A DNA stretch of 5,925 nt. It comes from Octopus sinensis. Taxonomy: Eukaryota. Where the stretch lies: assembly GCF_006345805.1 (NCBI RefSeq), contig NW_021829784.1, positions 1 through 5,925 of the forward strand, in the 5' to 3' direction. Within the stretch, counting starts at the first letter, position 1. The number at the start of each line of letters is the position of its first letter. Position numbers and translations under genes: made by a program. Below the pieces are notes generated by a model that was not told the DNA's origin, searched no databases, and worked only from the letters and a program-made list of their open reading frames with translations. This document shows, piece by piece, positions 1 through 5,925 of this stretch.

Positions 1-162
1 AGATTGGGTTTATTAACATTTGTGAAAAAAAAGATACCCTTCCCCCCACTCCTAACCCTAACTAACCCTAACCCTAAAACAGATCGATACTAGGGTCATA
101 ATTATGGGTGACAATTTCATATGACACCGCTAGAAAAAAATGCCATTCAAACAGAAGATATC
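1..162. mobile_element. Terminal part of a probable non-autonomous DNA transposon or MITE, cut by the window edge
   Basis: Contains imperfect (CCCTAA)n at 51-77 and ends AAAAAATGCCATTCAAACAGAAGATATC, similar to a recalled terminal inverted repeat of an abundant Octopus repeat. The other end lies outside the window, so the TIR cannot be confirmed. Confidence 0.4.
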
Positions 163-487: not shown

Positions 488-668
488 AAATAGTAATTGT
501 ACTGATTTCCATTGTTACCTTACTTTGCAAAATTGTACCGCCTCCACCGCGCATACATATACAAAACACGATCACACACACACACACCACACACACACAC
601 CATACTGTTCATGCCAATTAGGTGATGTGGATAATTATTGTTCACAACCTTGAATTCAGCAGAGTGAC

Positions 669-760
669 TATACATACATACATACATACATACATACATA
701 CATACATACATACATACATACATAATACAATATATATATACATATATACTTATATATTAT

Positions 761-793
<33 letters not shown>

Positions 794-890
794 TATATAT
801 GTTGAATTTTTGCTGCTTTTAAATAAAGTATATATATCTATATATAGTATATATATATATAGATATATATATTATATATATATATATAAT
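669..890. repeat. (TACA)n followed by (TA)n compound microsatellite, interrupted at 801-829
   Basis: Directly visible. Confidence 0.9.
801..829 (+). mobile_element. Short fragment of the same repeat family, opposite orientation
   Basis: GTTGAATTTTTGCTGCTTTTAAATAAAGT matches the reverse complement of 1930-1958 (GTTGAATTTTCTGCTGCTTTAAATAAAGC) and sits between two (TA)n tracts. Confidence 0.7.
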
Positions 891-1045
891 ACCAGAGCAA
901 GCACATAAATGCGAAACAGGGTGGAAAAAATAGTACTTGAATACCAGTGGTAGAGTAATATGCCTTATCAAAAAGCTATAAAATGATCAAAAAAGCTGTT
1001 ACTCAGAGTAACAGTTTTTGTTATATTTTTGCTGATTTTTAATAA
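891..1045 (-). mobile_element. Second copy of the hammerhead-bearing repeat, core missing, ending in an inverted junction
   Basis: 891-1009 aligns with 1859-1977. CTGTTACTC-A-GAGTAACAG (996-1014) is a perfect odd-centred palindrome, and 1006-1045 resembles the reverse complement of 1932-1972. Confidence 0.7.
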
Positions 1046-1059
1046 TATATATATATATT

Positions 1060-1309: not shown

Positions 1310-1389
1310 GTATAAATGTAAGTATGTACATATACTTATATATATATGCATATATATATATTATTATATTATATTATATATTATATATA
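1241..1389. repeat. Imperfect (TA)n microsatellite
   Basis: Directly visible. Confidence 0.9.
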
Positions 1390-1397
1390 GGGGTCAG

Positions 1398-1747
1398 GGC
1401 CACTCCGTCGGTTACAACGTTGATTCGATCAACGGAACAGCCTGCTCGCGAAATTAATATGCAAGTGGTTGAGCACTCCACAGACATGTGTACCCTTAAC
1501 GCAGTTCTCAGGAAGATTCAGCGTAAAACAGAGTATGACAAGGCTGGCCCTTTAAAATACAGGTAAAACAGAAACAGGAAGACAGAATGAGAGAAAGTTG
1601 TGGTGAAAGGGTACAGCAGGGCTCACCACCACCCACTGACGGAGCCTCGTGGAGCTTTCTTTTAGGTGTTTTCGCTCGATAAATACTCACAACGCCTGAT
1701 CTAGGATCGTGAGTCCGCTGCCCTAACCCCAATGGGCCATTGCGCCT
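1398..1747 (-). mobile_element. tRNA-derived SINE (octopus-type) with a deleted B box
   Basis: Minus strand starts AGGCGCAATGGCCCATTGGGGTTAGGGCAGCGGACTC (tRNA-like 5' half with A box). It is a GC-rich island between microsatellites with a 3' hairpin CGTTGAT/ATCAACG (1418-1434). It resembles a recalled abundant Octopus SINE (unverified). No GTTCRA B box follows the A box. Confidence 0.75.
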
Positions 1748-1858
1748 ACACATACATACGTACATACATACATACATACATACATATATACATACATACA
1801 TACATACATACATATTCTGATTTTATATATATACATATATATATATATATACATATAT
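1748..1858. repeat. (TACA)n/(TA)n microsatellite
   Basis: Directly visible. Confidence 0.9.
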
Positions 1859-2021
1859 ACCGGAGTAAACACATAAATGTGAAACAAGGTGGAAAAAAGA
1901 GTACTCAAATACCAGTGGTAGAGTAATATGCTTTATTTAAAGCAGCAGAAAATTCAACAAAATCTGTTACTCTGAGTTTCCCGTTGCCGTTCATCGGACA
2001 GTTTTTGCTAGATTCTAGCAA
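1859..2021 (-). mobile_element. Short non-autonomous hammerhead-bearing repeat (Penelope-like LTR or retrozyme-like), most complete copy
   Basis: Homologous to 891-1009 (65/73 identical over 1859-1931 vs 891-963). In hammerhead sense: ribozyme, then AATAAA (1937-1932), about 75 nt more, then (AT)n. Flanked on both sides by TA-rich microsatellite. No coding region. Confidence 0.65.
1955..2010 (-). ncRNA. Minimal type I hammerhead ribozyme (variant core), probably dimer-type
   Basis: Minus strand reads UAGCAAAAA-CUGU-CCGAUGA-ACG-GCAA-CGG-GAA-ACUC-A-GAGU-A-ACAG-AUUUUGUUG. Stem I is CUGU(2001-1998)/ACAG(1967-1964), extended by CAAAA/UUUUG. Core is CCGAUGA (1997-1991, U4C relative to CUGANGA). 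Stem II has a GNRA loop (GCAA) and an A.G pair at its base. GAAA lies at 1980-1977. Stem III is ACUC/GAGU with a 1-nt loop. The NUH triplet is GUA, predicting cleavage between 1968 and 1967. Confidence 0.8.
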
Positions 2022-2026
2022 TAAAG

Positions 2027-2196
2027 TATATACATATATATATATACATATATACATACATATATTCATACATACATACATATATATATTCATATATACA
2101 TACATATATTCATACATACATACATATATACATACATACATACATATATACATACATACATACATATATACATACATACATACATATATATATATA
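2027..2196. repeat. (TA)n/(TACA)n compound microsatellite
   Basis: Directly visible. Confidence 0.9.
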
Positions 2197-2851: not shown

Positions 2852-3084
2852 AGGGCGGTGAGCTGGCAGAAACCTTAGCACACCGGGCGAAATGCTTAGC
2901 AGTATTTCGTCTGCCGCTACGTTCTGAGTTCAAATTCCTCCGAGGTCGACATTGCCTTTCATCCTTTCGGGGTCGATAAATTAAGTACCAGTTACGCACT
3001 GGGGTCGATGTGATCGGCTTAATCCGTTTGTCTGTCCTTGTTTGTCCCCTCTGTGTTTAGCCCCTTGTGGGTAGTAAAGAAATA
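2852..3084 (+). mobile_element. tRNA-derived SINE, unit 1 (complete head)
   Basis: GGCGGTGAGCTGGCAGAAAC head, A box TGGCAGAAAC (2864-2873), B box GAGTTCAAATTCC (2926-2938), central GCCTTTCATCCTTTCGGGGTCGATAAATTAAGTACCAG, ending GTAAAGAAATA. Resembles a recalled Octopus SINE. Confidence 0.85.
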
Positions 3085-3268
3085 GGTATTTCGTCTGTCG
3101 CTACGTTCTGAGTTCAAATTCTACCGAGGTCGACTTTACCTTTCATTCTCTCGGGGTCGATTAAATAAGTACCAGTTATGCACTGGGGTCGATATAAACG
3201 GCTTAATCCGTTTGTCTTTCCTTCTTTGTCCCCTCTGTGTGTAGCCCCTTGTGGGCAGTAAAGAAATA
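3085..3268 (+). mobile_element. SINE unit 2, 5'-truncated tandem copy of 2901-3084
   Basis: Direct repeat with an exact 184-bp period. B-box-like GAGTTCAAATTCT at 3110-3122, no A box, same GTAAAGAAATA end. Confidence 0.85.
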
Positions 3269-3476
3269 AGAAACGTTAACACGCCGGGCGACCGGCTTAG
3301 CGTTATTTCGTCCGTTTTTACGCTCTGAGTTCAAATTCCGCCAAGGTTGACTTTTGCCTTTCATCCTTTGAGGGTCGATAAATTAAATTCCAGTTGTGTA
3401 CTGGGGTCGATCTAATCGACTGGGCCCCTTCCCCCAAAACTGGAGCCTTGTGCCTAGAGTAGAAAAGAATATCTAT
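3269..3476 (+). mobile_element. SINE unit 3, truncated within the A box, with a different 3' tail
   Basis: Begins AGAAACGTTAACACGCCGGGCG (equivalent to 2868 onward). B box at 3327-3339. After the shared central region it ends in CCCCTTCCCCCAAAACTGGAGCCTTGTGCCTAGAGTAGAAAAGAAT instead of the unit 1/2 tail. Confidence 0.8.
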
Positions 3477-4010: not shown

Positions 4011-4139
4011 ATGTGCTTCAGGGACCTCTTCAAATATTGCTGGCATGCGCACTAACGATTGGTAATATTATGACTATACATTCCGTTGGCCTGTGATGCA
4101 AATTGAATATCTACTTGCGTGCACCTTTATATACATACT

Positions 4140-4367
4140 TGCATATATACTTGTATTGTATACATGGATATATACATATATATATGTGTGTGTGTGTGTG
4201 TGTGTCCCCGTGTGTTTGAGTGTGTGTGTGTGTGTGTGTGCATATAGCTATAAATATAAATATATATATATGCATATATCTATCTATCTATATTTGTGAA
4301 TATGTGTGTATTTTAATTTAGTGTTTGTGTGCGTATATATATATGTGTGTGTGTGTGTATATATTTG

Positions 4368-4399
<32 letters not shown>

Positions 4400-4603
4400 T
4401 GCATACATGTATATACATGTACGTATATGATTGAGCATTAATGTGTATATACATTATACATGTCTATATGTATATTTTATGTATATATATATATATATAT
4501 ATATACATAAAATATACATATAGACACATGTATAATGTATATACGATATGCCTATATATATATATATGAAGATAAAGCGAATTATTAGAACTTTAATAAC
4601 ACA

Positions 4604-4643
<40 letters not shown>

Positions 4644-4733: not shown

Positions 4734-5215
4734 CTATAAAGAAAAAGACAGAATAAAGTAAAACCAAAAGCAAAAAAAAAAAAAAGCAAAACCAAAACAA
4801 GACGAAGAACAACAAACAAACAAAAAACTCAAATAATAAATGAATAAATAAATAAATAAATAAATAAATAGAAGAAAGGCGGAATGAATTCTTCAGGTCT
4901 GTTAGACAAAGAACATACTCGCCGAAAGACCTATACCATTCAACATTTTGGCCATGCTAACAATTATTACAGAACTCACCATAATTTTCTTGTATGAAGA
5001 ACTCATAGCCTTACCAATACACAAATTCCACCCTGCTATCTTCTACCATTTATTGAACCCGGAAGTTCGTGATGGGATTCCGTAATTCCAATAACATTGC
5101 ATAAACATGTTGGGTTTTTTTTCTCTTCTACTTTCATTAATATATGAAGTGTATTGGCTAAGAATAAGATGAGCCTCTGGCTACAGGAAAAACAATCTAT
5201 GTCTATAGTTTATTG

Positions 5216-5353
<138 letters not shown>

Positions 5354-5454: not shown

Positions 5455-5613
5455 GTGTGTGTGTGTACGTATGTATGTATGAATATATATTTATATATAC
5501 TTATCCTATGTATGCATGTATGCATGCGTGTATGTATGTATGTATGTATGTATGTATGTATGTATGTATGTATGCATGCGTGTATGTATGTATGTATGTA
5601 TGTATGTATGTAT
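5455..5613. repeat. (TG)n/(TATG)n microsatellite
   Basis: Directly visible. Confidence 0.85.
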
Positions 5614-5779
5614 GAATACATGTATCTACCTTTCTGATAGATACACATCTATTCATACACGCATACATACATATAGATACATACCTGAATGCATGCATGC
5701 ATGCACGCATGCCTGTATGCATGTATGTATGCGGGTACGAATAGATGTATATCTATAAGATAAATAGATACATGTATTC
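5614..5779. repeat. Inverted repeat with 59-bp arms (fold-back core)
   Basis: 5614-5672 matches the reverse complement of 5721-5779 at 52/59 positions. The 48-bp spacer contains (ATGC)n. Confidence 0.85.
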
Positions 5780-5925
5780 ACACACACATACATAGATACA
5801 TCATACACGCATGCATACATGCATATATATATACATGTGTGTGTATATAGATATATATATATATTGTTCAAAATGATACAAAAAATTAAAAAAATAAAAG
5901 CGTGAGAGAGAGATAGGTGAAAGAG

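What the first reader, a model, noticed from the sequence alone, without database searches (positions are those of the whole stretch)
1950..2015. Hidden minimal type I hammerhead ribozyme with a variant CCGAUGA core
Seen: the minus strand has every hammerhead element in type I order. Stem I (CUGU/ACAG) extends with two mismatches and some G.U pairs to about 18 positions (2015-1998 against 1967-1950). It is followed by CCGAUGA, ACG-GCAA-CGG, GAAA, ACUC-A-GAGU and a GUA site. Known: minimal type I hammerheads with very short stem II and palindromic stem III occur in Penelope-like element LTRs and metazoan retrozymes and cleave as dimers. Inferred: the 1-nt loop III cannot close as a monomer, so two copies would pair through ACUCAGAGU. 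U4C and the A.G pair at 10.1-11.1 are either family-specific variants or decay in this copy.
Basis: partly seen in the sequence, partly recalled or inferred. Interest (0 to 1): 0.85.

Follow-up and report, generated by a model that had tools for sequence, protein, structure and literature searches.

The report
Decayed hammerhead-like motif in a repeat
One copy of a short, microsatellite-flanked repeat in an invertebrate-like genome has a hammerhead-ribozyme-shaped sequence at the tip of a long hairpin, but it has two defects, no database model recognises it, and the only other copy of the repeat lacks the catalytic core, so it is most likely a dead relic (or a look-alike), not a working ribozyme.

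Summary
In type I order they are helix I, CCGAUGA, ACG-GCAA-CGG, GAAA, ACUCAGAGU, then GUA|ACAG. The motif counts as a hammerhead only if one core mismatch (U4C) and one helix II mismatch (A10.1.G11.1) are both allowed. That relaxed descriptor hits 1.0-1.3% of composition-matched random windows. Adding U7 and C15.2-G16.2 lowers this to about 4e-4, and no random hit also had the GNRA loop. No Rfam hammerhead model matches at E<=10. The hammerhead fold is 3.1 kcal/mol above the predicted minimum, and helix II forms in about 9% of the ensemble.

The motif lies in a ~170-nt repeat (1857-2030) with a second copy at 889-1056 (86% identical). That copy lacks exactly the 19 nt CCGAUGAACGGCAACGGGA, so helices I and III merge into a perfect 9-bp hairpin. 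No further copies could be retrieved, so consensus and covariation tests were impossible.

My estimates are: decayed hammerhead relic about 0.5, chance look-alike from an indel in a palindromic repeat about 0.37, active dimeric variant about 0.08. It fails the membership tests for Penelope-like-element minimal hammerheads and for non-LTR retrozymes. Interest is low to moderate.

The parts
1998..2015 (-). Helix I, 5' strand (GAAUCUAGCAAAAACUGU). The four core-proximal pairs are CUGU at 2001-1998.
   Evidence: sequence; this helix forms in the minimum-energy fold, with pair probabilities of 0.79-0.99 for the four core-proximal pairs.
1991..1997 (-). Core box 1, CCGAUGA (C3 C4 G5 A6 U7 G8 A9). 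Position 4 is C instead of the conserved U.
   Evidence: PMC9901934: single mutants of the CUGA turn all have low activity. PMC3088659: U4C is a natural viroid variant with much reduced activity in vitro.
1981..1990 (-). Helix II and loop 2, A.CG-GCAA-CG.G: two Watson-Crick pairs, a GNRA tetraloop and an A10.1.G11.1 mismatch.
   Evidence: pair probability about 0.09, and a competing CCG/CGG hairpin ties up C3-G5.
1977..1980 (-). Core box 2, GAAA (G12 A13 A14 A15.1).
1969..1977 (-). Helix III, ACUC-A-GAGU. It can form 4 bp around one central base, or 3 bp with a CAG triloop. It is near-palindromic, with an A.A clash at the centre in a homodimer.
   Evidence: monomer pair probability is about 0.25, and the predicted dimer forms the intermolecular 4+4-bp helix.
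1967..1968 (-). Predicted scissile bond, between A17 (1968) and A1.1 (1967).
   Evidence: Follows from hammerhead numbering applied. Not tested experimentally.
1950..1967 (-). Helix I, 3' strand (ACAGAUUUUGUUGAAUUU).
1979..1997 (-). The 19-nt GC-rich block CCGATGAACGGCAACGGGA (core box 1, helix II and G12-A13). It is present only in this copy of the repeat.
   Evidence: alignment gap in copy 1; unique in the window at up to 3 mismatches.
1857..2030 (-). Repeat copy 2 (~174 nt), flanked on both sides by (TACA)n/(TA)n microsatellites. Its 1926-2030 part is a long imperfect palindrome.
889..1056 (-). Repeat copy 1, in the same orientation and 86% identical over 154 aligned bases. It has no core; 996-1014 is a perfect hairpin, CTGTTACTC-A-GAGTAACAG on the + strand.
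   Evidence: it folds as a long hairpin with z = -2.4.
800..840 (.). A ~40-nt fragment of the same family inside a (TA)n tract. It matches the palindrome arm, so its orientation is ambiguous.
   Evidence: family D6; 85.7% over 42 nt to the reverse complement of copy 2, and 84% over 38 nt to the + strand end of copy 1.

Best explanation
The motif is most likely the decayed remnant of a type I hammerhead ribozyme carried by a short (~170 nt), AT-rich, microsatellite-flanked interspersed repeat.

In an ancestral minus-strand transcript, the two arms of the element's long hairpin would have formed helix I. The 19-nt GC-rich block (CUGAUGA-type box, a short helix II capped by a GNRA loop, and GAA) would have bulged from one arm. 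The hairpin tip would have formed a short, near-palindromic helix III. Cleavage would have fallen after GUA (between 1968 and 1967), probably needing a second RNA to lengthen helix III.

The present copy probably does not cleave at a meaningful rate, for five reasons:
- It carries U4C.
- It has an A.G mismatch at 10.1-11.1.
- Helix II has only two pairs.
- There is no loop-loop tertiary contact.
- A more stable alternative fold ties up the core.

In the sister copy the bulged block is gone and the hairpin is perfect. Template-switch 'correction' of an imperfect palindrome would produce exactly that.

Shown here: the sequence anatomy, the repeat family, the exact 19-nt difference between copies, the chance rates and the folding energies. 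Inferred: hammerhead ancestry, the direction of the indel and the loss of activity.
For: - All elements are in type I order.
- Features I did not require also match the natural consensus (U7, C15.2-G16.2, GNRA loop 2). Only 10 of 25000 random windows reach the relaxed descriptor plus the first two, and none reach all three.
- A random 15-25-nt insert in the family's palindrome gives a relaxed hammerhead in only 1-3e-5 of trials.
- The motif sits in an AT-rich interspersed repeat, as metazoan hammerheads do (PMC4209133, PMC7229834). Its surroundings recall insertions of Penelope-like elements (PLEs): (TA)n targets and an adjacent truncated or inverted fragment (PMC8557442).
- About 14% divergence between the copies predicts two or three substitutions in a 38-nt motif, which matches the number of defects seen.
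- U4C, a 2-bp helix II and a 10.1-11.1 mismatch each have natural precedent (PMC3088659).
- The T in copy 1 that replaces the block is exactly the complement of A17, as template-switch correction predicts.
Against: - No Rfam hammerhead model matches at E<=10.
- The relaxed descriptor alone hits about 1% of random windows, so a scan of many windows will produce such hits.
- My random controls contain no palindromes, and a palindrome supplies helices I and III for free.
- The only other family copy has no core. If the palindrome arose by inverted duplication, an insertion in copy 2 is as parsimonious as a deletion in copy 1.
- The fragment at 800-840 and the AATAAA-like end are more simply read with the + strand as the element's sense strand, which would put the motif on the antisense strand.
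- The hammerhead fold is 3.1 kcal/mol above the minimum-energy fold.
- The GNRA loop was noticed after the fact.
- No other family copies could be obtained.
Confidence: 0.5

Rival explanations
1. Chance look-alike. The repeat family simply has a long palindromic hairpin, for example a structural end of a non-autonomous transposon. A 19-nt GC-rich indel in one arm of copy 2 happens to read C-GAUGA...GAA, and the palindrome supplies helices I and III. On this reading no ribozyme ever existed here.
For: - Copy 1 has a perfect hairpin and no core.
- Both arms of the palindrome extend about 45 nt in both copies, independently of the core.
- The motif needs two relaxations to be found, and that descriptor hits about 1% of random windows.
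- Rfam models are silent.
- The folds are not significant and are not hammerhead-like.
Against: - A random insert at the palindrome yields even the relaxed motif in only 1-3e-5 of trials.
- The observed motif also has U7, C15.2-G16.2 and a GNRA loop, which no random hit combined in 25000 windows.
- No source for the 19-mer exists in the window.
Confidence: 0.37
2. One reading: an active minimal type I hammerhead with a family-specific C4 and A10.1.G11.1 core. It would cleave after A1968 when two RNAs pair through ACUCAGAGU, as dimeric hammerheads of Penelope-like elements (PLEs) and of retrozymes do.
For: - The predicted dimer forms the intermolecular helix III.
- A U4C viroid hammerhead still works in vivo (PMC3088659).
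- Natural hammerheads with a 2-bp helix II and a mismatched 10.1-11.1 pair exist (PMC3088659, section 8).
- Metazoan minimal hammerheads act as dimers with low activity (PMC4209133).
Against: - Several weakening features are combined: U4C, where all CUGA single mutants have low activity (PMC9901934); an A.G mismatch rather than the better tolerated U.U; a 2-bp helix II; and no loop 1-loop 2 contact.
- The core is tied up in a more stable alternative hairpin, even in the predicted dimer.
- No second core lies within the window, and the sister copy has lost the core, so there is no sign of selection for it.
- The motif is not in a tandem repeat or a pseudo-LTR.
Confidence: 0.08

Closest known systems
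Minimal type I hammerheads in the pseudo-LTRs of Penelope-like elements (Cervera and de la Pena 2014, PMC4209133)
   Same: Both have type I topology, a short helix I core (4-5 bp) and a very short, near-palindromic helix III that implies dimeric action. Both are expected to have low activity and sit in AT-rich metazoan repeats. The surroundings also recall PLE insertions: (TA)n microsatellite targets and an adjacent truncated or inverted fragment (PMC8557442).
   Different: PLE minimal hammerheads have a long helix II (6-8 bp), a conserved G10.1-C11.1 pair, an extra unpaired base after A9 and an intact CUGANGA box. Here helix II has 2 bp, 10.1-11.1 is A.G and position 4 is C. The window holds no reverse transcriptase or GIY-YIG reading frame, no pseudo-LTR pair and no second motif.
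Metazoan non-LTR retrozymes with type I hammerheads (Cervera and de la Pena 2020, PMC7229834)
   Same: The unit is small (~170 nt, at the low end of the 150-450 nt range), has low GC and is highly self-paired, with a type I hammerhead-like motif embedded in a rod or hairpin.
   Different: Retrozymes are head-to-tail tandem arrays in which every unit has a ribozyme, usually with loop 1-loop 2 contacts. Here two copies lie 968 nt apart, separated by unrelated sequence and microsatellites, and only one has a core.
Natural hammerhead core variants: the U4C viroid variant, U10.1-U11.1 and 2-bp helix II (Perreault et al. 2011, PMC3088659; Ambros and Flores 1998 as cited there)
   Same: The same kinds of deviation occur in nature one at a time: U4C, a mismatched first pair of helix II and a two-pair helix II.
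   Different: In those cases a single deviation is offset by tertiary contacts and by conservation across homologues. Here several deviations coincide, no tertiary contact is evident and no conservation could be shown.
SINE-like hammerhead-bearing repeats such as Schistosoma Sm-alpha (from my own knowledge; cited in PMC4209133 as Ferbeyre et al. 1998)
   Same: A short, interspersed, non-coding repeat carries a type I hammerhead.
   Different: Sm-alpha hammerheads are canonical, active and conserved across thousands of copies. This family's core is seen in one of two copies, and the element's likely sense strand may be the opposite one.

Membership tests
Hammerhead ribozyme (any type) | Conserved core C3-U4-G5-A6-N7-G8-A9 ... 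G12-A13-A14 | tested here: not met
   The sequence is CCGAUGA...GAA, so 8 of 9 conserved bases match and U4 is C. U4C strongly lowers activity (PMC9901934, PMC3088659).
Hammerhead ribozyme (any type) | A15.1-U16.1 pair followed by H17 at the cleavage site | tested here: met
   A1977 pairs with U1969, and A1968 is H17 (GUA).
Hammerhead ribozyme (any type) | Three helices around the core, with helix II starting at a (G)10.1-(C)11.1 pair | tested here: inconclusive
   Helix I is solid and helix III has 3-4 bp. Helix II has only 2 Watson-Crick pairs behind an A.G mismatch. Natural examples with a 2-bp helix II or a U.U mismatch exist (PMC3088659). Predicted helix II occupancy is 9%.
Hammerhead ribozyme (any type) | Match to a curated covariance model (Rfam hammerhead families) | tested here: not met
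   No hammerhead family appears at E<=10 in the whole window or in 141-nt sub-searches.
Hammerhead ribozyme (any type) | Conservation of the core and covariation of the helices among homologues | tested here: inconclusive
   Only one homologue could be found (889-1056), and it lacks the core and helix II altogether. No copies were found in the viral, metagenome, prokaryote-genome or protein collections.
Hammerhead ribozyme (any type) | Site-specific self-cleavage | not testable with these tools
   This needs in vitro transcription and cleavage assays, or mapping of RNA ends.
Minimal hammerheads of Penelope-like elements (PLEs) | Located in pseudo-LTRs flanking a reverse transcriptase / GIY-YIG reading frame, or a second motif nearby (<50 kb) | tested here: not met
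   All ORFs are microsatellite or low-complexity readings and none hits Pfam. There is no second core in the window. Only 5.9 kb could be examined.
Minimal hammerheads of Penelope-like elements (PLEs) | Long helix II (6-8 bp), an unpaired base between A9 and 10.1, and a conserved G10.1-C11.1 pair (PMC4209133) | tested here: not met
   Helix II has 2 bp and the first position is A.G.
Minimal hammerheads of Penelope-like elements (PLEs) | Palindromic 15.2-16.2 pair and loop 3, allowing a dimeric helix III | tested here: met
   ACUCAGAGU is palindromic except for its central A. The predicted homodimer forms a 4+4-bp helix.
Metazoan non-LTR retrozyme | Head-to-tail tandem repeats of 150-450 bp, each with a type I hammerhead (PMC7229834) | tested here: not met
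   The two copies start 968 nt apart with unrelated sequence between them, and only one has a core.
Metazoan non-LTR retrozyme | Expression as small circular RNAs | not testable with these tools
   No transcriptome data are available here.

The most novel reading that the evidence does not exclude
A previously undescribed hammerhead subfamily with a C4 / A10.1.G11.1 core, carried by a short repeat that sits in microsatellites. Core-bearing copies would act as dimers or in trans on core-less copies. Those copies still present the substrate strand GAGUA|ACAG, and their helix III sequence (ACUCUGAGU) is the exact complement of this copy's ACUCAGAGU.
Probability: 0.05. Interest if true: 0.55.

Novelty: new member of a known kind. 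Interest (0 to 1): 0.2.

Why it matters
If the relic reading is right, it adds one more decayed hammerhead-bearing repeat to the thousands known in invertebrate genomes. It would also be a small example of how a ribozyme bulging from a hairpin can be erased cleanly, leaving a perfect palindrome. That is ordinary biology and mainly useful for repeat annotation. It would matter more only if genome-wide copies showed C4 and A10.1.G11.1 to be a conserved, active core. That would widen the accepted sequence space of natural hammerheads and link them to a new class of microsatellite-associated short repeats.

Tried and rejected
1. Rfam covariance models. I searched the whole window and three sub-regions at E<=10 and found no hammerhead. 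The many mir-297 and mir-466-type hits are microsatellite artefacts.

2. More family copies, DNA searches. A conserved 18-20-mer found nothing in viral contigs, three unrelated chance hits in metagenome contigs and four unrelated bacterial hits in prokaryote genomes. The core 20-mer found nothing in viral contigs.

3. More family copies, protein searches.
- A translated-ORF query through the motif found no candidate.
- A chimeric query joining translated segments of both copies in several reading frames on both strands had 2034 candidates, none at E<=10.
- None of the ten longest window ORFs is in the protein collection.
- A query from the neighbouring SINE-like repeat found one protein on a 543-nt ENA contig, which is too short to help.
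As a result, consensus and covariation could not be tested.

4. Plus strand 1899-1972 as a tRNA-derived head. By eye it shows a 74-nt cloverleaf with CAGTGGTAGAG. I rejected it as unsupported, because ARAGORN found no tRNA and Rfam gave no tRNA hit at E<=10.

5. Penelope-like element coding capacity. No ORF has a Pfam hit.

6. A local source for the 19-nt block. There is none within 3 mismatches.

7. Helitron or Helentron-like reading of the element. It has a CTGG/CCGG end followed by T, a short CACAT..ATGTG hairpin about 10 nt upstream and microsatellite association. I considered this by eye only. The 5' end does not fit, so I left it unresolved.

8. Literature. Supplements of PMC4209133 and PMC8557442 are not held, so no published motif lists could be compared. 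A search for hammerheads in cephalopods returned nothing relevant.

Full report
**What is in the sequence**

Read on the minus strand from 2015 to 1950, the window gives:

GAAUCUAGCAAAAACUGU | CCGAUGA | ACG-GCAA-CGG | GAAA-CUC-A-GAG-U | A | ACAGAUUUUGUUGAAUUU

In hammerhead numbering the parts are:
- Helix I: CUGU (2001-1998) pairs with ACAG (1967-1964). The pairing extends to 18 positions, with 13 Watson-Crick pairs, three G.U pairs and two mismatches.
- Core box 1: C3 C4 G5 A6 U7 G8 A9 (1997-1991).
- Helix II: A10.1.G11.1, then C-G and G-C, capped by GCAA (1990-1981).
- Core box 2: G12 A13 A14 A15.1 (1980-1977).
- Helix III: ACUC/GAGU around a single A (1977-1969).
- A17 at 1968, with the predicted scissile bond between 1968 and 1967.

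**Is it more than chance?**

I wrote a type I descriptor with these requirements: 4-bp helix I, CUGANGA, an optional extra base, helix II of at least 3 positions, a loop of 3-10 nt, GAAA, helix III of at least 3 bp including 15.1-16.1, a loop of 1-8 nt, and U-H.
- The motif is found only when one core mismatch and one helix II mismatch are both allowed. Nothing else in the window matches at any setting.
- This relaxed descriptor hits 16 of 1200 dinucleotide-preserving shuffles of the window. The strict descriptor hits none.
- In 25000 first-order Markov windows the relaxed descriptor hit 250 times, or 0.010 per window.

So a scan of many windows will produce hits of this grade by chance.

The observed motif also matches three consensus features that I did not require: U7, the C15.2-G16.2 pair (the classical GAAAC...GUH boxes) and a GNRA loop 2. 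Among the 250 random hits, 46% had U7, 6.8% had C15.2-G16.2 and 0.8% had a GNRA loop. Ten had the first two and none had all three. I noticed the GNRA loop after the fact, so it should be discounted. Even so, the motif is a clearly better hammerhead than a typical chance hit.

**Model-based and thermodynamic tests are negative**
- No Rfam hammerhead family appears at E<=10 in the whole window, in 1900-2040 or in 1855-1995.
- The 66-nt and 106-nt RNAs have unremarkable minimum-energy folds, with z = -0.8 and -1.7. Helix I forms, but the centre pairs as CCG/CGG, which ties up C3-G5.
- The hammerhead secondary structure, with a 3-bp helix III and a CAG triloop, costs -8.4 kcal/mol against -11.5 for the minimum. 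Ensemble pair probabilities are about 0.09 for helix II and about 0.25 for helix III.
- Two copies of the RNA are predicted to dimerise through ACUCAGAGU (4+4 bp around an A.A clash), but the core stays in the alternative hairpin.

**The motif lies in a repeat, and the sister copy has no core**

The region 1857-2030 is one copy of a ~170-nt AT-rich element. A second copy in the same orientation lies at 889-1056. The first 85 nt are 87% identical, and a global alignment gives 133 of 154 aligned bases, or 86%. A ~40-nt fragment lies at 800-840. Both full copies are bounded by (TA)n/(TACA)n microsatellites. In both, the half that holds the motif is a long imperfect palindrome with arms of about 45 nt. 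Copy 1 folds as a long hairpin with z = -2.4.

The global alignment places a single large gap. The 19 nt CCGATGAACGGCAACGGGA (1997-1979), which hold core box 1, helix II and G12-A13, are absent from copy 1 and replaced by one T. Copy 1 therefore reads CUGU-U-ACUC-U-GAGU-A-ACAG on the minus strand, a perfect 9-bp hairpin (996-1014) in which helices I and III are fused and A17 is paired.

Three things follow:
- The long helix I extension belongs to the family's palindrome and is not independent evidence for a ribozyme.
- The core is not conserved in the only homologue available.
- The difference between the copies is exactly the catalytic insert, and this can be read in two ways.

**Weighing the two readings**

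If the family merely has a hairpin and copy 2 gained a random insert, the resemblance is unlikely. Random 15-25-nt inserts placed anywhere in the copy 1 palindrome produced even the relaxed motif in 3-13 of 400000 trials, or 1-3e-5. The 19-mer has no source elsewhere in the window.

If copy 2 is the older form, one template-switch correction of an imperfect palindrome would remove the bulge and write the complement of A17. This mechanism is established knowledge, not tested here. It matches what copy 1 shows.

The about 14% divergence between the copies predicts two or three substitutions in a 38-nt motif, which is the number of defects seen.

Three points count against ancestry:
- My controls contain no palindromes.
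- If the palindrome arose by inverted duplication, an insertion in copy 2 is just as parsimonious as a deletion in copy 1.
- The fragment at 800-840 and the AATAAAG end next to (TA)n are more simply read as a 5'-truncated copy with the + strand as the sense strand. That would put the motif on the antisense strand.

My estimates are: hammerhead ancestry about 0.5 (plus about 0.08 that it is still active) and chance look-alike about 0.37.

**Would this copy work?**

Comprehensive mutagenesis of a hammerhead found that all single mutants of the CUGA turn have low activity; among the single and double mutants in that region, only the C3-G8 base-pair swap kept activity (PMC9901934). [quoted passage not shown] A two-pair helix II and a U10.1-U11.1 mismatch occur in nature, but U.U is the best tolerated mismatch, and here it is A.G (PMC3088659, section 8). 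This copy combines all of these defects. It has no evident loop 1-loop 2 contact, it prefers another fold and it has no core-bearing partner within the window. I therefore infer that it is inactive or nearly so. This was not tested.

**Comparison with known families**

Minimal hammerheads of Penelope-like elements (PLEs) share the type I topology, the short helix I, the near-palindromic helix III and the dimer logic. They are defined by a long helix II (6-8 bp), a bulged base after A9, a conserved G10.1-C11.1 pair and a location in pseudo-LTRs (PMC4209133). None of these is met here, and no ORF in the window hits Pfam.

Non-LTR retrozymes are head-to-tail tandem arrays of 150-450-bp units, each with a ribozyme (PMC7229834). 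Here the copies start 968 nt apart, unrelated sequence lies between them, and only one has a core.

The surroundings do recall PLE-type insertions: a (TA)n target bias, 5' truncation and adjacent inverted truncated copies (PMC8557442). That is a resemblance, not a membership test. The family's class remains unresolved. I considered a Helitron or Helentron-like reading by eye only.

**Limits**

No further copy of this family exists in any collection I could reach. The source organism is unknown. The window looks like invertebrate DNA, with TTAGGG-type repeats, dense microsatellites and SINE-like repeats.

**Verdict**

The best reading is a dead hammerhead relic in a short microsatellite-associated repeat. 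A chance look-alike is a close rival, and an active variant ribozyme is unlikely. Interest is 0.2.

Noticed in passing
window 2868-3421: Three adjacent copies of a ~185-215-nt SINE-like repeat. The first two are 91% identical over 183 nt. A translated frame matches (82% identity) one 109-aa ORF on a 543-nt ENA metagenome contig, the only outside trace of this genome that I found.
   Followed up: partly
window 40-80: A short run of telomere-like CCCTAA/CCTAA units (cctaaccctaactaaccctaaccctaaaac) in an interstitial position.
   Followed up: no
window 1381-1740 (minus strand): A GC-richer ~355-nt block between microsatellites. By eye its minus strand begins like a tRNA-derived SINE head (GGCGCAATGGCCCATTGGGGTTAGGG...). 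ARAGORN and Rfam report no tRNA.
   Followed up: partly
window 660-880, 1230-1380, 1744-1856, 2031-2200, 2640-2810, 4130-4640, 5213-5350, 5460-5870: Very dense microsatellites: (TACA)n, (TA)n, (TG)n, (TAGG)n/(GATA)n and (CA)n. All sub-threshold Rfam hits (mir-297, mir-466, mir-5014, mir-3149 and others) fall on them and are artefacts.
   Followed up: yes
window 1899-1972 (+ strand), inside repeat copy 2: This 74-nt stretch can be drawn by eye as a cloverleaf, with a GAGTACT/GTTACTC acceptor, a CAGTGGTAGAG D-loop-like box and a TGCTT...AAGCA stem. No tRNA model hit appears at E<=10, so it is not supported.
   Followed up: yes
window 1969-1977 and 1001-1009: Helix III of copy 2 (ACUCAGAGU) and the hairpin tip of copy 1 (ACUCUGAGU) are exact reverse complements. 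Their minus-strand transcripts could therefore form a perfect 9-bp heteroduplex, and core-less copies keep the GAGUA|ACAG substrate strand.
   Followed up: no
window 2003-2019 (minus strand UGCUAGAAUCUAGCA): A small local palindrome, GCTAGA-T-TCTAGC, lies in the outer arm of copy 2 only. It forms its own hairpin in the 106-nt fold and competes with the distal part of helix I.
   Followed up: partly
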